From positions 1 to 64,000 of IMG/VR virus record IMGVR_UViG_3300035698_013060: a stretch of DNA of 64,000 nt; one strand, written 5' to 3'. The position numbers and the translations under genes were made by a program. This document shows, in pieces, positions 2,980 through 54,352 of the stretch. The notes beneath the pieces are model-generated. The model did no database searches, was not told the DNA's origin, and was given only the letters and a program-made list of their open reading frames with translations. Position 1 is the stretch's first letter. Each line of letters starts with the position of its first letter.

Positions 2980-3099
2980 TCTACACAGGAGCCCTCAACC
3001 GGGACTTTCCCTAGGGTGATGAGTAGGAGCATAGAAATATCTTTACACTCAAGGCGCTTTTGAGGTTCCCTTTGACCTGAGCAACCCGACGGGAGAACT

Positions 3100-3208: not shown

Positions 3209-4708
3209 ATGAATCAATCGGAACTCGTCTCCGCTGTCTCTGACAAGTCGGAGCCGTTCAACGAAGAAATGATCTTCTACAGAGAGCGAGAATCCATCAT
3301 CGCTCATCTCGAAAATATATGCAGGGCACTCGAGGTCATTGAATACATCAAATTCGTCGGCCTCGATTGGGAAGACGATGAGAGCAAGATGACTGCTTTC
3401 TCCACGGTGGACATCAAGCAAGCCAGGTTCGCCGAAGTTACGATGCGCTTCAGAGTAACGTACAAAGGGGAAACCCAAGACGTTATCAAGAAGACCTTCA
3501 TCCCGAGACTTGTCGACAACTTCTTCTTCATCATCAACGGCATACGCTACTATCCGATTTATCAGATAGTGGATCGAGGAGTATTCGTCACGCCGAAGGT
3601 GTATTCGTTGAAGACACTGCTCATGCCTATCCGCTTCAAATACAAACGGGTAGCAATGGCCGATGCGCACGACCAAGAGTTTGAAGCTCATGAGTTCGAG
3701 CTGAATCTGTTCAAAAACAGTATCAGTTATCTGTACTACTTCTTCGCAAAAATGGGTCTTCACGGGACTCTGGGATACTTCGGTTACGAGTACGGCGACG
3801 GTGCAGACCTGCTTCTCGTCGAGGCTGATGAACTGGAAGACTTGTCAGCGTACAAGAAGAGCATTTTCTATTCGTTCTGGTTAAAGGGTGATCTCTGGTT
3901 GATAGCCAAGAAGAAGACCTTTAAGACCGAAGAACAGAAGAGCTTTCTCTACTCGCTTGTCGAGGTCCTATCTGTGATAGGAGATGTCGAGGACATTGAA
4001 GAGGAATGGCTTCGTGTACTCGGAAGCCTCTTCACCAAGAGTGCTAACAGCAGGGTCGACAAGGCCCGCAAGGTTCTGTTCTCGTTGGAGAGGATTCTGG
4101 ACGACGAGACCAAGCGTATCCTCAGCGAGATCAAGCCGGAAGACAAGGAAGACACTTATTCCATCATCAGGTGGATGCTTCGTGAATTCGAAACACATCA
4201 GTACCAGGACAACGTTAGCCTCCGCTGCAAGCGGATGCAGTGTTGGGAGTATCTCACCAATCCACTTCTACGGTTTTTCAGTAACGCTACCTATCGCATT
4301 CTCAACACGAGAAACCTTACTATCAGGACTCTGACCGGTGTATTCAACATCGGCCCGAACTTCTTGACAAAGAGGTTACTCAGCAACGAACTGGTCAGAT
4401 ATGAAGGTGGAGTAAATGCCATCGACCTCTTCGGGGCATCTTTGAAAGTGACCATGCGTGGGGCTGGATCTATCGGTGGCTCCGGTGGAGACGTCTCTGA
4501 CAGATACCGAGGAGTGCACAAGAGTTACGTTGGAAATCTGTCGTTGGTTACAGCCAGCCCAGGTGATCCTGGACTGAGTGCAGTACTCACCCCATTTGCC
4601 AATGTTGAAGAAGGTGTGTTCAACATGTTGGAAGATGAGCTGGCGGACAAACCTACTAAGAAGGCTAAGAAGCCCGCGACTAAGAAAAGAGGAAGGGAAA
4701 AGAAGTGA
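3209..4708 (+). CDS. Phage multisubunit RNA polymerase, beta subunit N-terminal fragment (probably non-virion RNAP)
   Basis: FFIINGIRY (beta FIINGxE region) and YRGVHKSYVGNLSLVTASPGDPGL, equivalent to RDVHxSHYGRICPIETPEGxNIGL; stops before the C-terminal catalytic half. Confidence 0.88.
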   Translation: MNQSELVSAVSDKSEPFNEEMIFYRERESIIAHLENICRALEVIEYIKFVGLDWEDDESKMTAFSTVDIKQARFAEVTMRFRVTYKGETQDVIKKTFIPRLVDNFFFIINGIRYYPIYQIVDRGVFVTPKVYSLKTLLMPIRFKYKRVAMADAHDQEFEAHEFELNLFKNSISYLYYFFAKMGLHGTLGYFGYEYGDGADLLLVEADELEDLSAYKKSIFYSFWLKGDLWLIAKKKTFKTEEQKSFLYSLVEVLSVIGDVEDIEEEWLRVLGSLFTKSANSRVDKARKVLFSLERILDDETKRILSEIKPEDKEDTYSIIRWMLREFETHQYQDNVSLRCKRMQCWEYLTNPLLRFFSNATYRILNTRNLTIRTLTGVFNIGPNFLTKRLLSNELVRYEGGVNAIDLFGASLKVTMRGAGSIGGSGGDVSDRYRGVHKSYVGNLSLVTASPGDPGLSAVLTPFANVEEGVFNMLEDELADKPTKKAKKPATKKRGREKK

Positions 4709-5580
4709 TTGATCGAACGTCAACGATGATCAAAGTCAGAACTGCAGCGGCCATCGCTAACGTCGGTCTTCCTACTTACTACTTCTCATCAGAGGTGGCC
4801 CCGCTTGGGGTCACCTTTCCGGGGTGTAAGAATGTTCTGAAGACCATAAAGGCCATTCTAAAAGAAGGTTACACTGGCTTTTGCTTAAGAACAGAATGGC
4901 CAGATAACGCTCATCTGGAGCAGTGTAAGGGATTCCAATGGCCTCTATACCCTGTCAATCTAAACAGTCGCCTGAAGTTTTACATCTTTAGGAACATTCA
5001 ACCAGGTTCAACTGATACGACTTACGCTATTGACTATCTTGAGGCCATACTAGATGGAGGGGTTAGCAAGTACGGAAGGATGGATCCGTCCCTTGATCTT
5101 TCAAACACCGTAGACTTTAATGAGATTGTCCAGCCTTTCGGGGCGTTCCCTTTCATATACGAACATGTGAGTTGTTATCAGATGAGGATAGCCATTCAAG
5201 ACTCCTCTAAGATATCTCATTGGAACGCTACGGTGGCATGGGATAGAATCAATGGAAGAATGGATGGAAGGTACGGACTGGTCGGCGAGGTCAACCCCAC
5301 AAGCGATATCTCTCATAGGGAGGCTTTGAGTTCAGGAGGATTAAAGGCCACGGGCGTCCTCCCAGTCAGTCAATGGTTCTCTGAGGACAGAGGCAAGCTC
5401 AGATACATCATGCGAGACCATGCCATTCCAGGTATCTGGTATGAGTGTTCTAAGATTGATGGTTCTCGTTTTCAGTTTTGGGACATTGCTGAAGACTCCA
5501 CTAGAGCTTACAGTTCTTGGTGTCTGAATCACCTGAAAGACATCGATCTGATAGAGTATCATCTGGACTACCGTAAATAA
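4705..5580 (+). CDS. Hypothetical protein
   Basis: 291-aa ORF overlapping the stop of the RNAP gene (GTGA); no recognised motif. Confidence 0.75.
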   Translation: MIDRTSTMIKVRTAAAIANVGLPTYYFSSEVAPLGVTFPGCKNVLKTIKAILKEGYTGFCLRTEWPDNAHLEQCKGFQWPLYPVNLNSRLKFYIFRNIQPGSTDTTYAIDYLEAILDGGVSKYGRMDPSLDLSNTVDFNEIVQPFGAFPFIYEHVSCYQMRIAIQDSSKISHWNATVAWDRINGRMDGRYGLVGEVNPTSDISHREALSSGGLKATGVLPVSQWFSEDRGKLRYIMRDHAIPGIWYECSKIDGSRFQFWDIAEDSTRAYSSWCLNHLKDIDLIEYHLDYRK

Positions 5581-5595
5581 ACCATACGGTTGATA

Positions 5596-5603
5596 CATAT
5601 TAG
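5596..5603 (+). promoter_or_regulatory. Early-class promoter CATATTAG (ncRNA candidate)
   Basis: TGATACATATTAGTAAT is identical over 17 nt to the promoter at 53494-53510. Confidence 0.65.
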
Positions 5604-5950
5604 TAATGTATCGCGAACGATGACGTTCGTGTTGCAAAGGTACCTGGTGGACCAATGCGTAAAAAGGAAGGTTATTGATCCGTGCGCTAATGGAAGCGTG
5701 TGCACGGGGAGACTATGCCAGCCTCTGTATCCCGTCGCCTTCGGGTGTACGCTGGGATCAGGTGCAGAGGAGTCAGGAATATTGTGATCTAAGGCCCAGC
5801 AACAATTGTGGATTAAGTCGCCCTGGCAGCGATACCACGACCTAGACCAATGGAAAAAGGTTTCCAACCACTGGTCGATCCGCCGAGGTATATCGGTTTT
5901 TAAGTAATCCGCCGATAGGGTCCTGAAAGGGGCCTTATCGGTATTCCTTT
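5604..5950 (+). ncRNA. Unclassified ~350-nt structured RNA candidate
   Basis: Own promoter and terminator, no credible ORF; many G-U-containing helices, cUUCGg and GAAA tetraloops, long-range pairing 5641-5651/5879-5890. Confidence 0.65.
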
Positions 5951-5981
5951 TTCTTTTCTATGCTCCCTTTAGAAAGAAGAA

Positions 5982-6009
5982 GGCCCCTATCCCGTGAAGG
6001 ATAGGGGCC
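5982..6009 (-). terminator. Terminator of major capsid gene
   Basis: GGCCCCTATCC-N6-GGATAGGGGCC followed by TTCTTCTTT on the minus strand. Confidence 0.8.
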
Positions 6010-6047
6010 AACTCGAACTTCAGACCGAAAGGTCTGCTGGGACTCCG

Positions 6048-7715
6048 TTACGGAGTGGGCCAGCTGACGGCGCCGGTGTTGTTCTTGATCTCAATGCGGA
6101 AAATCGCATCGTTGAAGTACTCAGTCAGATGCCGCTTCGCGATCATGATGCTCGGGACCAAGCTGTACTGGGGATCCGAGTAACCCTTCTCGACGTTGAA
6201 GCTGTAGGGGAAGTACTTGTAGGTCATCTGCTCGTCCTGGGACGAGACAAAGATCACGTACAGGTAGCCCTGAGGCATCGCCGGGGTAGACACGATCTCG
6301 TAGCGATTTGCACCGCTGATAGCGCCGAGGCTGTAGTCTGCTTCCACACCCGAGCGTTCGCCAGCGGAACCAACAAAGGTCCAGGTGACATTCGGGAGCA
6401 GGTTGCAGTCCAGATCATTGCCGATGATCACGAACTTGCCGCCCGTGAACATACGATCCTGCTTGAGCTTCGTGGCGTAATGGTCGATCACGTCCTTCAG
6501 CATTTCGCGCCAGGCCTTCGGCGTACCGGAGAACTGTGCGTAGGGCTTCAGGTCGAATTCGGCCGGATAACGCTGGTCGCGGGCATAGCCCTCGACGATG
6601 AAGTCGCGCAGCTCGTGGTCGAGCTTCAGTGCCAGGGTGTTGGTCATGATATCGACGACCTTCGCGGCACCGTCGATATTGTACATGGCCATCACGTCTT
6701 GCAGGAACTCGATGGGAAGCGGGGCGTTCAAGTGTGTGCCGGTTCCGATCGTCAGGTCGCGAGTCTGAATGTCAAACGAGATACTCTCGGTATGCATGTT
6801 GAATTCAGAGCTGAGCTTACCCTTGATCTTCACTCCCAAGACGAAACCGCCGGTGGTCGCCAGCGTCAACGTCCCTGTCACACGATCCACACGGCCGAAC
6901 AGGTTGTCGGTCGTAGGAACTGCACCAGTCAAGGGGTTGCCGTCGACATCCAGGTCACTGGGATGGTACGCAGAGACGGCGTAGAAAACATCACCGTTCA
7001 GGCCACAACCGATACGTAGCTGTTCCACATCCACTGGTGCATCAGCATCACCGCCGAGGCTATGAGTGGTGGTGATCCGAACTGCGATCACATGGAAATC
7101 CGGATCAACACTGTCACCGACTGCCGCAGAGGCAACTGCCGCACCGGGAAGAGTCCCCAACAGGTCGAAGCCCTTGGTGGCACCGTCTACAATACCAGCA
7201 CCGTAATCGGTGTCGGCCAAGAACAGCCAATCATTCCAGAGAGACTGGCCTTCGACCAGACCTTCTGCACTGCCGCCGTCCATGATGGCTTCGGGCAGGT
7301 AATGGCGAACGCCATTCTTGATGATGTACGGAAGCAGGTAGCTGACCGAGAACTTCGGCAGCTTCACAACTTCGGTCGGAATGGCGTTCTTCATCGCCAT
7401 CCGGGGCCAAAGCTTCCTGATCGTCGGAACGCTCAGGCTGCTGATCGGGGTAACGCCGCTGAGGCTCTCTTGGAGAGTCGTCATCCGGCTGTTGTCAATG
7501 AGTTGCGCCAAGGAGTCCTGCTCATCGGCATCGACGCCCTTAAGCATCGCGGCCTTGTAGTCCTCGAACAGCCCGTTGTCGCTCAAGATCTCCTGGTAAC
7601 CTTCACCCAGGATATTGACGTGCTGTTCATCGAACAGGGCTTTTGCCTCATTCAGGACTTGGCTGTAGCCATCCTGTTTGGGCGCACCGAGATTGGTGGT
7701 CTTGTATGAAATCAT
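6048..7715 (-). CDS. Major capsid protein (HK97 fold, gp23-like) precursor
   Basis: 555 aa; highly biased codon usage; SLSVPTIRKLWP, LQDVMAMYNIDG...LALKLDHEL (gp23-like), LNE/LQE candidate cleavage sites; late promoter and strong terminator. Confidence 0.88.
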   Translation of the reverse strand: MISYKTTNLGAPKQDGYSQVLNEAKALFDEQHVNILGEGYQEILSDNGLFEDYKAAMLKGVDADEQDSLAQLIDNSRMTTLQESLSGVTPISSLSVPTIRKLWPRMAMKNAIPTEVVKLPKFSVSYLLPYIIKNGVRHYLPEAIMDGGSAEGLVEGQSLWNDWLFLADTDYGAGIVDGATKGFDLLGTLPGAAVASAAVGDSVDPDFHVIAVRITTTHSLGGDADAPVDVEQLRIGCGLNGDVFYAVSAYHPSDLDVDGNPLTGAVPTTDNLFGRVDRVTGTLTLATTGGFVLGVKIKGKLSSEFNMHTESISFDIQTRDLTIGTGTHLNAPLPIEFLQDVMAMYNIDGAAKVVDIMTNTLALKLDHELRDFIVEGYARDQRYPAEFDLKPYAQFSGTPKAWREMLKDVIDHYATKLKQDRMFTGGKFVIIGNDLDCNLLPNVTWTFVGSAGERSGVEADYSLGAISGANRYEIVSTPAMPQGYLYVIFVSSQDEQMTYKYFPYSFNVEKGYSDPQYSLVPSIMIAKRHLTEYFNDAIFRIEIKNNTGAVSWPTP

Positions 7716-36816: not shown

Positions 36817-37044
36817 ATGTTGAATCTAGACGAATACGCAAAAGAGTTTGAGATTACTCCCATGCTCTCGGATGTGGATGAGAGAGAACTCGTTACCTTA
36901 CTTCATGCTGCCAAGACAAAACTTTATCTTATGAGAAGAGACATGTTGAGCAACGATGCTCTTAAGTTAGTTCAACATGAACTTGAAGTACTCTCCGGAT
37001 ACTACACTGAAGAGTACAAGAACGATGAAGATGGAGGAGCATAG
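36817..37044 (+). CDS. Hypothetical protein
   Basis: GGAGGAG RBS. Confidence 0.7.
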   Translation: MLNLDEYAKEFEITPMLSDVDERELVTLLHAAKTKLYLMRRDMLSNDALKLVQHELEVLSGYYTEEYKNDEDGGA

Positions 37045-37048
37045 AAAG

Positions 37049-38989: not shown

Positions 38990-39117
38990 CAGCCTTTTCG
39001 AACGGATATTAGGCTGTTGTCTCCGATTCCTACTCTTTTGGAGGATTCTGAGATGAGGACGGACGTAAAGTCGGTAATCGAAGAATATTGGAAAAAGAGC
39101 GAATTCAAGCTCAAAGT

Positions 39118-39194
39118 ACCCTGGTAGCTCAGCTGGATAGAGCAACGGCCTTCTAAGCCGTAGGTCCCGCGTTCGAGTCGCGGCCGGGGTGCCA
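39118..39194 (+). tRNA. tRNA-Arg(TCT)
   Basis: Full cloverleaf: ACCCTGG/CCGGGGT, anticodon loop CTTCTAA, TTCGAGT T-loop, encoded CCA. Confidence 0.97.
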
Positions 39195-40328: not shown

Positions 40329-40780
40329 GGGGGCGAATATGGTCTCGACTGGGTAGACTAAGGTGATAGCTGCGTTCAGAGGATGGGTCGTTGGCCTCTG
40401 TAAAAACATCGACCTGCAAACACAACTGCCAAAACCACACCGGTTATGCAGTTCCCCGCTCCTCTTGCCCTCGCGGCATAAGGAACTAGTTGACGAGACA
40501 ATGCCCGGCCGAACTCGCCGCCCTAGAGGCACAGAGTTTCGTCACGTCAGCGAAAAGAACATAGGTATCGGGTAAAGAACCCACGGGTCGTGTAGCTAAC
40601 GTACACGTGGACGGTCCTTCGGGACCACTAGCTCGACTCACAATGTCGCTCTTCGGAGCGGTGGAGTGTCTTTCCATGCCTGTAATAAGGTGAGTCGTAT
40701 CGGCACAAACATAGACTATAACGTAGACGCTATTACTAAGTGTATCTAGGACCCGGGTTCGACTCCCGGCGCCTCCACCA
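40329..40780 (+). ncRNA. ssrA: tmRNA (452 nt)
   Basis: 5' GGGGGCG...TCGAC; 3' T-arm CCGGGTTCGACTCCCGG, then CGCCTCC-A-CCA with G3-U wobble; tag ORF 40428-40481 AKTTPVMQFPAPLALAA*. Confidence 0.96.
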
Positions 40781-41382: not shown

Positions 41383-41458
<76 letters not shown>

Positions 41459-52898: not shown

Positions 52899-53597
52899 AT
52901 GATGAAGAGACTGAGGGAAGATGCGTCCACGATAAGGCGTATGTGGAAGCTGTTACTGTCGGACTTCGTTGTCGGCTTCGTATCGGCTGTGTTCATGGCT
53001 GTTTTCTTCAAACTCAAAGGAGAGTATTTGACGCTATCAACTATCGCTATGTTGGGATGCTTTGGCAGTTCAGCTGGAATACTCAGACCGATGTTCGCTA
53101 AAACGAGTTTGAAACGTCTCAGGACATGGGCTATAGCATTGGACCTTCTTAGTTCGTTCACCATGGTAGCGTTTGTATTCGTGAAGAATCCTCTGTGTTT
53201 AATCATAGCGACGATCAACAACATTGGAGTGGGAACGACATACGGAGCTATGGACGATGGTATTGAGCATAGCATTATGGAGGCAGGAATAATGTATCGA
53301 GTCCATAAGTCATGGGCTAGAACATTTGGGTGTGCCGGAGCTCTAACGGGAGGACTTGCTCTCACTTTATTGAATGGTATGGGACTAGTTGACAGCGATA
53401 CTGCTCTAGCATTTGCCTGCTCAGTCAATATACTGGTCCTACCAGTGACGTGGTGGGCTGTCGAAGAGTGGGTGAGGCGAATGCTTACTCTTCTGATACA
53501 TATTAGTAATTTAGACTGGAATGGTTTCAGTCTGTCGCAGGAGGCTCTAGGTGAACATCACCGAGACAATCCAGCGGGCAATAGCAGCGACCCGTGA
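52899..53597 (+). CDS. MFS-like membrane protein (single ~6-TM half)
   Basis: AAGGAGGT RBS, early promoter at 52853-52860; about 6 hydrophobic helices; 3' end runs through the next promoter and is uncertain. Confidence 0.6.
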   Translation: MMKRLREDASTIRRMWKLLLSDFVVGFVSAVFMAVFFKLKGEYLTLSTIAMLGCFGSSAGILRPMFAKTSLKRLRTWAIALDLLSSFTMVAFVFVKNPLCLIIATINNIGVGTTYGAMDDGIEHSIMEAGIMYRVHKSWARTFGCAGALTGGLALTLLNGMGLVDSDTALAFACSVNILVLPVTWWAVEEWVRRMLTLLIHISNLDWNGFSLSQEALGEHHRDNPAGNSSDP

Positions 53598-54078
53598 GGT
53601 CATTCCTGACTACTTCGAGTCGACCCTGGTGATGCATCGTCAGGGCTCCGGCAAGGAGCAAGGGAGTGTCTTTGTGGGCTTCGGTTCCGATAAGGAACTT
53701 GAGGACGCGCTTGTGGCAGCCGAGTGGGAGTCTTACTCTCACCCGGACGTCATGGAAGGCTGTGAAGCCTTCAGAGCGCCAATCGAGGGACTACTCGGTA
53801 CCGTCGATCTCGCAGCTCTGCCCGGCGACCACGTCGTCATCCTCGAGGATCCGAAGGAGACCGGTCAGGTCTCTGCGGTGGTTCGAGGAGTTCCAGCTGA
53901 GAAGGTGGCGTTCTGCGCCATCATACTCGGTTTGGAGCAGGAGAAGACCGTGGTATTCACGGTTCATCCTGGCGATCCCGTCCGCCCTTCTCAGGTACCC
54001 GCGCAGGACCTGGCTGGGAAGACGGTTACCGTAAAGGAAGCCCTGGAACTGGGTCTCCCGATCGGTAAGTTCGCCTAG
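53551..54078 (+). CDS. Hypothetical early protein
   Basis: GGAGG RBS + GTG; promoter at 53499-53506; VFTVHPGDP. Confidence 0.8.
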   Translation: MNITETIQRAIAATREVIPDYFESTLVMHRQGSGKEQGSVFVGFGSDKELEDALVAAEWESYSHPDVMEGCEAFRAPIEGLLGTVDLAALPGDHVVILEDPKETGQVSAVVRGVPAEKVAFCAIILGLEQEKTVVFTVHPGDPVRPSQVPAQDLAGKTVTVKEALELGLPIGKFA

Positions 54079-54352
54079 TCAACCTTCGGGTTGTACGAAG
54101 CGGAGTGGTCACTCGACTGGCTATTTGCTCACCGTACATACGGTGGCGGTAAGACCTGCCTAAAAATTGGTCAGTGCAGCCACGCAGAGCTACCATGCCT
54201 GCACAAGCCCTGAATGGCAATCAGGAAAAGGAGTGCGCCGGTTGCCAACCGCAGCTGCTCTCCTTTTTCTATGCCCCGTAGCTATACGCTTTTCGGTCTC
54301 ATATTACCGCATTGACTTGAAGAAACACGGAAACGAAAACTGGAGAAGATCA

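What the first reader, a model, noticed from the sequence alone, without database searches (positions are those of the whole stretch)
5596..5950. Stand-alone ~350-nt multibranched RNA with its own early-type promoter and terminator
Seen: promoter CATATTAG (5596) and a terminator with GAAA loop (5912-5941) bracket a region with no RBS-supported ORF. Helices: 5613-5630 hairpin; 5641-5651 with 5879-5890 (closes a ~250-nt domain); 5680-5687 with 5700-5707; 5722-5731 with 5761-5770 capped by cUUCGg (5739-5744); 5711-5714 with 5771-5774; bulged TGCCAG (5716-5721) complementary to CTGGCA (5823-5828), a possible pseudoknot; 5845-5876 nested hairpin. G-U pairs and tetraloops favour the + strand. I could not match it to RNase P, SRP, 6S, group I/II introns or a riboswitch. 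Inference: an unclassified large phage ncRNA, possibly a ribozyme or RNP scaffold, perhaps partnered with the unknown protein 4705-5580.
Basis: partly seen in the sequence, partly recalled or inferred. Interest (0 to 1): 0.8.

Follow-up and report, generated by a model that had tools for sequence, protein, structure and literature searches.

The report
Orphan non-coding early transcript unit
A 370-base gene-free stretch in an uncultured AR9-like giant phage carries a genuine early-promoter motif and a strong terminator, so it probably makes a ~340-base non-coding RNA, but nothing shows that this RNA has a conserved fold or a ribozyme-like role.

Summary
The window is the start of a 241-kb AR9/PBS1-like jumbo phage from a salt-lake metagenome. 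Positions 5581-6047 are a 467-nt gap between a 291-aa gene (+) and the major capsid gene (-).

Supported:
- The promoter word belongs to a recurrent motif, GA(C/T)A-N-ATATTAG. It has about 21 good sites, nearly all 23-125 nt upstream of SD-led gene starts. It resembles the AR9 early (virion RNA polymerase) promoter.
- A strong intrinsic terminator sits at 5911-5942.
- No frame has a credible start or gene-like codon usage.
- No Rfam family matches.

Not supported:
- The fold is no more stable than this genome's background.
- The proposed closing helix has an ensemble probability of 0.6%.
- The energy does not favour either strand.
- No homologue exists in any collection searched, so covariation cannot be tested.
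- The only full-length homologue of the neighbouring protein has no such RNA beside it.
- No RNA run was listed, and the four DNA runs are identical.

Best reading: an autonomous, moron-like early transcription unit making a string-of-hairpins RNA of unknown role. A decayed gene cassette is the main rival. Three distant jumbo-phage records carry the same promoter word ahead of short terminator-bounded stretches without ORFs. That hints at a class of such units, but no homology was shown.

The parts
4705..5580 (+). Upstream neighbour: a 291-aa protein of unknown function, last gene of the + operon. It is not part of the RNA unit.
   Evidence: ORF with an SD. Codon score is 0.17. It has no Pfam or PHROG match. 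There are only four remote homologues in 1.8 billion representatives. One of them is a PKD-repeat protein.
5588..5603 (+). Early-type (virion RNA polymerase-like) promoter motif, GTTGATACATATTAG
   Evidence: PWM score is 21.6, within the range of about 21 good sites genome-wide that precede SD-led genes. It is identical over 17 nt to the site at 53494-53510. It resembles the annotated AR9 early promoters (PMC5312081). The same 13-17-mer recurs in distant jumbo-phage records.
5610..5610 (+). Predicted transcription start, 6 nt after the motif. Here it is A; at the other sites it is usually G.
   Evidence: There is a conserved position 7 nt after ATATTA in the PWM. Fifteen of 21 sites have G there. 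The AR9 geometry is motif-(6N)-G+1 (PMC5312081). This start is inferred, not measured.
5612..5631 (+). 5'-terminal hairpin: 8 bp with an AUGA loop
   Evidence: Base-pair probability is 0.998. Promoter-proximal 40-mers of this class fold better than genome 40-mers (mean -9.4 against -6.5 kcal/mol, p = 0.014).
5679..5708 (+). Hairpin H2
   Evidence: Present in the MFE and centroid folds. The duplex energy is -13.2 kcal/mol.
5722..5770 (+). Hairpin H3, with a 10-bp base. CUUCGG lies at 5739-5744 in its apical part.
   Evidence: Probability of the base pairs is 0.99. The probability of the UUCG-closing pair is only 0.29.
5772..5827 (+). Hairpin H4.
   Evidence: Probability of pair 5774-5825 is 0.92, against 0.05 for the pseudoknot pairing 5718-5826.
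5838..5876 (+). Hairpin H5
   Evidence: Present in the MFE and centroid folds.
5882..5902 (+). Weak first terminator T1: 5-bp stem followed by T5. It looks like a shortened copy of T2.
   Evidence: Found by the terminator scan. It shares the direct repeats ATCCGCCGA and TATCGGT with T2.
5911..5958 (+). Strong intrinsic terminator T2: 13-14-bp stem, GAAA loop, T-rich tail. This is the predicted 3' end of the RNA.
   Evidence: Terminator scans. The hairpin energy is -21.2 kcal/mol.
5955..5966 (-). GGAGCATAGAAA motif on the minus strand, pointing antisense into the unit. It may be a late-type promoter or a translation-initiation signal.
   Evidence: There are 7 exact sites in 241 kb and 0 in a shuffle; 14 against 1 with one mismatch allowed. 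Four exact sites sit directly before ATG. One of those genes encodes a virion structural protein. Three exact sites, including this one, have no start codon after them.
5982..6009 (-). Terminator of the major capsid gene (minus strand). Its sequence is related to T2.
   Evidence: Terminator scans. The repeats shared with T2 are listed.
6048..7715 (-). Downstream neighbour: the major capsid protein gene, convergent with the unit
   Evidence: phrog_20655 at 8.8e-138 and Pfam Gp23. It is 40% identical to the AR9 major head protein.

Best explanation
Window 5588-5958 is an autonomous, moron-like early transcription unit of an AR9-like jumbo phage whose product is non-coding.

Proposed sequence of events:
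1. The injected virion RNA polymerase recognises the GATACATATTAG motif and starts near 5610.
2. The transcript begins with a protective 5' hairpin, as other transcripts of this promoter class do.
3. It runs through about 290 nt that fold into a row of independent hairpins.
4. It ends at two tandem intrinsic terminators: a weak one at 5882-5902 and a strong one at 5911-5958. The result is an RNA of about 290-340 nt.

Shown here: the motif, its genome-wide association with gene starts, the terminator, and the absence of coding signal. Inferred: that the unit is transcribed, that this happens early, and the exact ends.

The same terminators also end the upstream operon, which includes the RNA polymerase subunit gene and the 291-aa gene.

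The most likely role is a stable early RNA that acts through short single-stranded segments or bound host factors, as a regulator or decoy. A ribozyme or large folded scaffold is less likely. This last step is conjecture.
For: Promoter:
- The motif is real and recurrent, with about 21 good sites. Nearly all are co-oriented with SD-led starts and lie 23-125 nt upstream of them. One precedes tRNA-Arg, so this class also drives an RNA gene.
- The 5595 site scores 21.6 and is identical over 17 nt to the site before gene 53551.
- The AR9 early consensus AAATATATATTAT-(6N)-G has the same core and geometry (PMC5312081, PMC7598289).
- The same 13-17-mer occurs repeatedly in distant jumbo-phage records.

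Terminator:
- It appears.

Non-coding:
- Every ORF scores below about 94-99% of true-gene windows.
- No start is SD-supported.
- There are no Pfam or PHROG hits.
- There is no similarity to proteins of relatives.

Other points:
- The gap is the second largest in the genome.
- 5' hairpins are generic to this promoter class.
- Comparable units, with the promoter word followed by 85-380 nt without ORFs and then a terminator, occur in G008 and G007.
Against: - There is no expression data. No RNA run was listed.
- There is no conservation. The four DNA runs are identical and no homologue turned up anywhere.
- AR9 work shows that one mismatch can kill a predicted early promoter (PMC5312081). The predicted +1 here is A, not the usual G.
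- Fold stability is not above background.
- Frame 0 (5590-5907) has only one internal stop and the opposite strand has a 99-codon open frame. That pattern is seen in 2.8% of shuffles and is typical of coding DNA.
Confidence: 0.5

Rival explanations
1. It is the relic of an early gene cassette (a decayed moron). The promoter, 5' hairpin and terminator survive, but the small gene between them has lost its SD, its start and its frame. The RNA may still be made but does nothing.
For: - The architecture and size equal those of neighbouring early cassettes, for example 53498-54270.
- Frame 0 has a single internal TGA in 106 codons, and a second frame on the other strand is open.
- The slot after the RNA polymerase subunit gene is hypervariable in relatives. 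One relative has only a 97-nt gap before its capsid gene.
Against: - Codon usage is non-coding in every frame.
- There is no remnant similarity to any protein family or to relatives' proteins.
- The promoter and both terminators are perfectly intact.
- The phage has no suppressor tRNA.
Confidence: 0.22
2. It is one half of a convergent sense/antisense pair. The early + transcript and a later - transcript, started at GGAGCATAGAAA (5966-5955), overlap. Their pairing or polymerase collision would shut off early + transcription of the operon late in infection.
For: - The minus-strand motif is highly non-random and sits exactly at the end of the unit.
- One gene directly behind such a motif encodes a virion structural protein.
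- Near-matches of the motif lie antisense at the ends of two other early units, at 54277 and 54880.
- AR9 has seven late promoters that drive antisense transcription (PMC5312081).
Against: - The motif may be a translation-initiation signal rather than a promoter, since it contains GGAG and sits 1 nt before ATG at four sites.
- There is no transcript data.
- This reading does not explain why 300 nt of spacer are kept.
Confidence: 0.12
3. It is merely the long 3' UTR and termination buffer of the upstream operon, set between convergent genes. On this reading the promoter-like word is inactive.
For: - No terminator lies between the stop codon at 5580 and 5882, so operon transcripts must cross the stretch.
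- Other 3' regions of this phage are also hairpin-rich, for example 54079-54270.
- AR9 has a consensus-like early promoter that is silent (PMC5312081).
Against: The 17-nt identity to a gene-proximal promoter (BLAST E = 0.005 within the genome), together with the matching 5' hairpin layout, is hard to credit to chance. Relatives manage with gaps of about 100 nt.
Confidence: 0.1
4. One reading: a large multibranched structured RNA, either a ribozyme or an RNP scaffold, possibly working with the 291-aa protein.
For: All the proposed helices are complementary as stated. A UUCG and a GAAA loop are present, and the + strand MFE is lower than the - strand MFE.
Against: - The closing helix has probability 0.006 and costs 5 kcal/mol.
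- z-scores are about -2 on both strands and lie within the genome background.
- There is no Rfam match even at E up to 10.
- No paralogue or homologue was found with a covariance model of the core.
- The protein's homologue lacks the RNA.
Confidence: 0.06

Closest known systems
AR9/PBS1 early transcription units (virion RNA polymerase promoters, consensus AAATATATATTAT-(6N)-G; Lavysh et al. 2017, PMC5312081)
   Same: Both have an AT-rich ATATTA core, a start about 6 nt downstream, recurrence in front of early operons, and a host phage that is an AR9 relative (major capsid protein 40% identical).
   Different: The consensus here is GA(C/T)A-N-ATATTAG. This unit has no gene behind the promoter. 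No transcript mapping exists for this phage.
Morons: autonomous promoter-gene-terminator insertions between conserved phage genes (the Hendrix concept; cited from general knowledge)
   Same: It has its own promoter and its own terminator. It is inserted in a slot that is empty or differently filled in relatives.
   Different: The cargo is non-coding or decayed. There is no clear compositional contrast with the flanks.
Phage-encoded stable non-coding RNAs with their own promoter: phi29 pRNA, and the ncRNAs reported in jumbo phages such as PA5oct (PMC7318152)
   Same: It would be a phage-made RNA of a few hundred nucleotides or fewer that is not translated.
   Different: There is no sequence or structure match to any curated family, pRNA included. 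No function or binding partner is known.
Large structured phage-associated RNAs (GOLLD, ROOL, HEARO/omega RNA) and RNase P, 6S, SRP and tmRNA
   Same: The size range is similar, and they occur in phage or mobile DNA.
   Different: None of their Rfam models matches even at E up to 10. There is no adjacent IscB or TnpB gene. Folding is not unusually stable.

Membership tests
Any Rfam 15 family (RNase P, 6S, SRP, tmRNA, group I/II introns, riboswitches, pRNA, GOLLD, ROOL, HEARO, small ribozymes) | Covariance-model score at or above the family's gathering threshold | tested here: not met
   In the whole window only a tmRNA and two tRNAs pass, all elsewhere. On 5400-6150 at E up to 10 there are three sub-threshold chance hits, two of them on the terminators.
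AR9-type early (virion RNA polymerase) transcription unit | Match to the phage's own recurrent AT-rich early motif | tested here: met
   PWM score is 21.6. The site is identical over 17 nt to the site before gene 53551.
AR9-type early (virion RNA polymerase) transcription unit | The motif class sits upstream of, and co-oriented with, gene starts across the genome | tested here: met
   Nearly all sites scoring 17 or more lie 23-125 nt before an SD-led start. One lies before tRNA-Arg.
AR9-type early (virion RNA polymerase) transcription unit | Conserved purine (G) start 6 nt after the motif | tested here: inconclusive
   Fifteen of 21 sites have G. This site and its twin at 53498 have A.
AR9-type early (virion RNA polymerase) transcription unit | Transcript present early and independent of protein synthesis | not testable with these tools
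   No RNA run was listed, and the host is uncultured.
Intrinsic terminator | G+C-rich stem-loop followed by a T run on the transcribed strand | tested here: met
   5911-5942 has a 13-14-bp stem at -21.2 kcal/mol with the tail ATTCCTTTTTCTTTTC.
Evolutionarily conserved structured RNA | Compensatory base-pair changes among homologues | not testable with these tools
   No homologue was found: phages blastn, 15 related records by DNA and/or the CM, held loci. The four runs are identical.
Evolutionarily conserved structured RNA | Folding energy clearly below shuffles and below the genome background, and specific to one strand | tested here: not met
   z is -2.15 on + and -2.59 on -. The + strand ranks at the 11th and 4th percentile of genome windows. 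The strand difference is ordinary.
Protein-coding gene or recent pseudogene | ORF with an SD and start, gene-like codon usage, or protein homologues | tested here: not met
   Shown. The residual hint is two unusually open frames.
Moron | Own promoter and terminator, inserted between genes that are adjacent in relatives | tested here: inconclusive
   The promoter and terminator are present. One relative has the RNA polymerase subunit gene, one further gene and the capsid gene with a 97-nt gap. Its DNA could not be read, and the intervening proteins are not shown to be homologous.

The most novel reading that the evidence does not exclude
The unit is one example of an unrecognised class. In environmental jumbo phages that share the GATACATATTAGTAAT early promoter, several short terminator-bounded units of 85-380 nt carry no gene. 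There are three in G008, a tandem array of five in G007/G010, and this one. They would be very early, fast-evolving non-coding RNAs made by the injected polymerase. Candidate roles are decoys or regulators aimed at host factors or defences.
Probability: 0.15. Interest if true: 0.6.

Novelty: new member of a known kind. Interest (0 to 1): 0.3.

Why it matters
If the RNA is really made, it would be one of the first transcripts of an AR9-like jumbo phage, produced by the injected polymerase before any phage protein. Non-coding early products of such phages are almost unstudied.

As it stands, the finding mainly yields two things. It defines this uncultured phage's early promoter and a second recurrent motif. 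It also gives a candidate ncRNA that still needs expression data. It does not open a long-standing question, and there is no evidence for a new ribozyme or scaffold class.

Tried and rejected
Searches for a known family:
- Rfam at gathering threshold and at E up to 10: nothing.

Searches for homologues of the RNA:
- blastn against 50,697 phage records: nothing.
- A paralogue in the phage's own genome: only the promoter word repeats.
- Variation among four salt-lake runs: zero differences across 4.6 kb, so no comparative signal. This used the single read-laying run.
- DNA and covariance-model searches (R1, core 5676-5830) of 15 related records, including whole AR9 and BpSp, and of 10 held loci: nothing below E = 1.
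- Global alignment to the analogous 340-nt unit of G008: 42.9% identity, the same as shuffled controls. Its fold z-score is -1.85.

Routes through the neighbouring genes:
- Capsid protein: a relative with 84% identity exists, but its contig stops 82 nt past the gene. A relative with 66% identity has a different gene there.
- RNA polymerase subunit: the closest relatives are 47-56% identical, and synteny downstream is variable.
- The 291-aa protein: the word-based search found only itself. The exhaustive search found four remote relatives. The full-length one has no RNA beside it.

Tests of a coding or pseudogene origin:
- tblastn of all ORFs of the relatives' loci against the region: only noise.
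- Pfam and PHROGs on the ORF pieces: nothing.
- Stop-codon recoding: rejected, because the phage has only tRNA-Arg and tRNA-Lys.

Other checks:
- Antisense targets in the phage genome: only chance-level 11-12-mers.
- RNA sequencing runs: none was listed.
- 'TTCTATG' as a general terminator tail: rejected.

Full report
CONTEXT

The window is the first 64 kb of a 241,176-bp IMG/VR record with direct terminal repeats. The record comes from salt-lake metagenomes. Its major capsid protein (6048-7715, minus strand) is 40% identical to that of Bacillus phage AR9/PBS1. It is 29-37% identical to the capsid proteins of other uracil-DNA-type jumbo phages. Gene 3209-4708 is a split RNA-polymerase subunit (phrog_2943).

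The finding lies in a 467-nt gap (5581-6047). The gap separates the last gene of a plus-strand operon, a 291-aa protein at 4705-5580, from the convergent capsid gene. It would be the second largest gene-free gap in the genome (after discounting a spurious 99-codon ORF).

THE OBSERVATION

The promoter word is the best-supported part:
- A position-weight search seeded with A(C/T)ATATTA(G/T) converged on GA(C/T)A-N-ATATTAG. It also found a conserved base 7 nt after ATATTA. The final scan gave 25 sites, about 21 of them scoring 17 or more.
- Almost all of those are co-oriented with an SD-led start codon and lie 23-125 nt upstream of it. One precedes tRNA-Arg.
- The annotated AR9 early promoters read (C/T)ATATATTATAT. 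The published AR9 early consensus is AAATATATATTAT-(6N)-G+1, recognised by the injected virion RNA polymerase (PMC5312081, PMC7598289). The core and the geometry are the same here.
- The site at 5595 scores 21.6. It is identical over 17 nt to the site at 53494-53510, which lies 44 nt before gene 53551.
- The same 17-mer, or its 13-mer core, recurs in distant jumbo-phage records of IMG/VR. There are four to five copies in G007/G010, three in G008, and single 21-nt matches in G009 and G011.

The terminator at 5911-5942 is strong: a 13-14-bp stem, a GAAA loop, -21 kcal/mol and a T-rich tail. It is preceded by a weak one at 5882-5902 that looks like a shortened copy of it.

CODING POTENTIAL

No plus-strand ORF has a credible start. 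The best candidate is a 56-codon TTG ORF at 5675, with GGAAGG only 3 nt upstream. Real genes here have 7-10 nt of spacing.

I trained a codon log-odds score on the long ORFs of this genome:
- True 50-codon windows score 0.26 +/- 0.12.
- Every ORF of the region scores between -0.16 and +0.08, below about 94-99% of true windows.
- Small bona fide genes score 0.17-0.34.

There is no Pfam or PHROG hit. There is no similarity to any ORF of the relatives' loci.

One residual hint of a coding past remains. Frame 0 (5590-5907) has a single internal TGA, and the opposite strand has a 99-codon open frame. Only 2.8% of dinucleotide shuffles give two such open frames, and the pattern is common in coding DNA. 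The phage encodes only tRNA-Arg and tRNA-Lys, so recoding is excluded.

STRUCTURE

The predicted fold is a row of independent hairpins: 5612-5631, 5679-5708, 5722-5770, 5772-5827 and 5838-5876, followed by the two terminators.

Stability:
- Without the terminator the z-score against dinucleotide shuffles is -2.15 on the plus strand and -2.59 on the minus strand.
- Against GC-matched 290-nt windows of the same genome, the plus strand ranks at the 11th percentile for the global fold. It ranks at the 4th percentile when only local hairpins are allowed.
- The strand difference of about 10 kcal/mol is matched or exceeded by 47% of genome windows.

- The helix 5641-5651/5879-5890 is complementary. 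Enforcing it costs 5 kcal/mol, and its ensemble probability is 0.006.
- The proposed pseudoknot arm is used by a hairpin of probability 0.92.
- The 5' hairpin is not special to this RNA. Transcripts predicted from this promoter class generally begin with a stable hairpin (mean -9.4 against -6.5 kcal/mol for genome 40-mers, p = 0.014).

So the strand assignment rests on the promoter and the terminator, not on the fold. A large closed architecture is not supported.

HOMOLOGUES

I found none.
- Rfam gives nothing, even at E up to 10.
- blastn against 50,697 phage records gives nothing.
- Contigs from four salt-lake runs are identical over 4.6 kb.
- The nearest capsid relative (84% identity) sits on a 2.3-kb contig that ends 82 nt after the gene.
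- The 66% relative has a 483-aa gene downstream of its capsid gene instead.
- The closest RNA-polymerase-subunit relatives are 47-56% identical, and what follows that gene differs in each. One contig has the subunit gene, a 326-aa gene and the capsid gene with only a 97-nt gap.
- A covariance model of the core (5676-5830) and the DNA itself found nothing. Both were run on most of 15 related records (L002's record by the model only), including whole AR9 and BpSp. The model was also run on ten further loci, and the phage's own genome holds no second copy.

Covariation therefore cannot be tested. No RNA run was listed.

THE NEIGHBOURING PROTEIN

An exhaustive HMMER search found four remote relatives of the 291-aa protein. 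They include a full-length one (P0030, 40% identity) and a PKD-repeat secreted protein. In the P0030 contig the gene is followed by a 102-nt gap holding a terminator hairpin and then a convergent gene. Nothing links the protein to the RNA.

A SECOND SIGNAL

On the minus strand at 5966-5955, directly after the capsid terminator and overlapping the T-tail of the plus-strand terminator, lies GGAGCATAGAAA.
- This 12-mer occurs 7 times exactly in the genome and 0 times in a shuffle. With one mismatch allowed the counts are 14 and 1.
- Four exact copies are followed by (A/G)ATG. One of those genes encodes a virion structural protein.
- Three exact copies, including this one and the one 183 nt upstream of the polymerase-subunit gene, have no start codon after them. 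That suggests a promoter, perhaps late-type, rather than only a ribosome-binding context.

If it is a promoter, the stretch is transcribed convergently from both sides. This is unproven.

COMPARABLE UNITS ELSEWHERE

In G008, a 195-kb jumbo phage whose capsid and polymerase subunit are only about 24% identical to ours, the core ACATATTAGTAAT occurs three times. Each copy is followed by a stretch without an SD-led ORF and then a terminator. The stretches are about 340, 115 and 85 nt long.

In G007/G010 five tandem units share the promoter word, a conserved 5' hairpin and a conserved 3' hairpin. Their 200-380-nt interiors have no ORF of 30 codons with an SD.

The 340-nt G008 unit shows no sequence similarity to ours: 42.9% identity, against 42.7 +/- 3.2% for shuffles. 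Its fold z-score is -1.85. This is an analogy of architecture, not homology.

VERDICT

The most economical reading is an autonomous early transcription unit with non-coding cargo. It consists of a promoter, a predicted start near 5610, a 5' hairpin, about 290 nt of hairpins and tandem terminators. It is inserted, like a moron, into a variable slot. I put this at about 0.5.

The rivals are:
- a decayed gene cassette (0.22);
- a sense/antisense pair with the minus-strand motif (0.12);
- a plain 3' UTR with a silent promoter-like word (0.10);

It is a new, unverified member of a known kind, namely phage-encoded non-coding transcripts. Interest is modest until expression or conservation is shown.

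Noticed in passing
window 40329-40780 (+): There is a phage-encoded tmRNA (Rfam RF00023, 102 bits, full-length model) that ARAGORN did not call. It lies between tRNA-Arg(TCT) at 39118-39194 and tRNA-Lys(CTT) at 41383-41458. The tRNA-Arg is preceded by an early-promoter motif at 39004.
   Followed up: partly
window 5955-5966 (-), 3026-3037 (+), 37036-37047 (+); G000:C1 78009, 120739, 144497, 229992: The 12-mer GGAGCATAGAAA occurs 7 times exactly and 0 times in a shuffle. Four copies sit directly before ATG, and one of those genes encodes a virion structural protein. Three copies have no start codon after them. It may be the late promoter or a combined promoter and translation signal of this phage.
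   Followed up: partly
window 5878-5945 and 5982-6009: The weak terminator T1 looks like an internally deleted copy of T2, sharing ATCCGCCGA and TATCGGT. T2 and the capsid-gene terminator on the other strand share GATAGGG(T/G)CC arms.
   Followed up: no
G000:C1:146040-146520 (-), outside the window: A high-scoring early promoter (24.0) and a strong terminator bracket about 470 nt. This stretch has coding-like composition in two frames but no canonical start. It may be a gene with an unusual start codon or a frameshift.
   Followed up: partly
L050 (G010) and L052 (G007), minus strand, about 1.1 kb: There is a tandem array of five units. Each has GATACATATTAGTAAT (one copy has ATCAG in place of ATTAG), a conserved 5' hairpin (AATCAG...CTGATT), a variable AT-rich interior of 100-250 nt and a conserved 3' hairpin (GCCACTGGAGC.ATCCAGTGGC). 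No SD-led ORF of 30 codons is present.
   Followed up: partly
L051:1154-1513 (-), L053:1500-1690 (+), G008:C1:77030-77140 (-): In G008 all three copies of ACATATTAGTAAT are followed by terminator-bounded stretches of about 340, 115 and 85 nt without SD-led ORFs. The 340-nt one is 53% G+C in a 44% G+C genome and has no Rfam match.
   Followed up: partly
window 54079-54270 (+): Gene 53551-54078 has a long (about 190 nt) hairpin-rich 3' region that includes a cUUCGg hairpin and a strong terminator. Hairpin-dense non-coding tails are therefore not unique to the finding.
   Followed up: no
L025:29-715 (+): In one relative (RNA polymerase subunit 56% identical) a TnpB-like gene (OrfB_IS605 / Cas12f-like TNB domains) lies directly upstream of the subunit gene.
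   Followed up: no
L002:3634-5085 (-): In the relative with 66% capsid identity, the slot downstream of the capsid gene holds a 483-aa gene with repeated Cys-rich CPxHG...C.KC modules. It may be a homing-endonuclease-like insertion. This shows that the junction is a hot spot for accessory DNA.
   Followed up: no
window 4705-5580 (+): The 291-aa protein is nearly an orphan. The ESM Atlas model has pLDDT 0.26, and there are four remote relatives in 1.8 billion representatives. One relative is a 1347-aa PKD-repeat, type IX-secreted protein that matches in six stretches. That hints at a repeated beta-sandwich-like module.
   Followed up: partly
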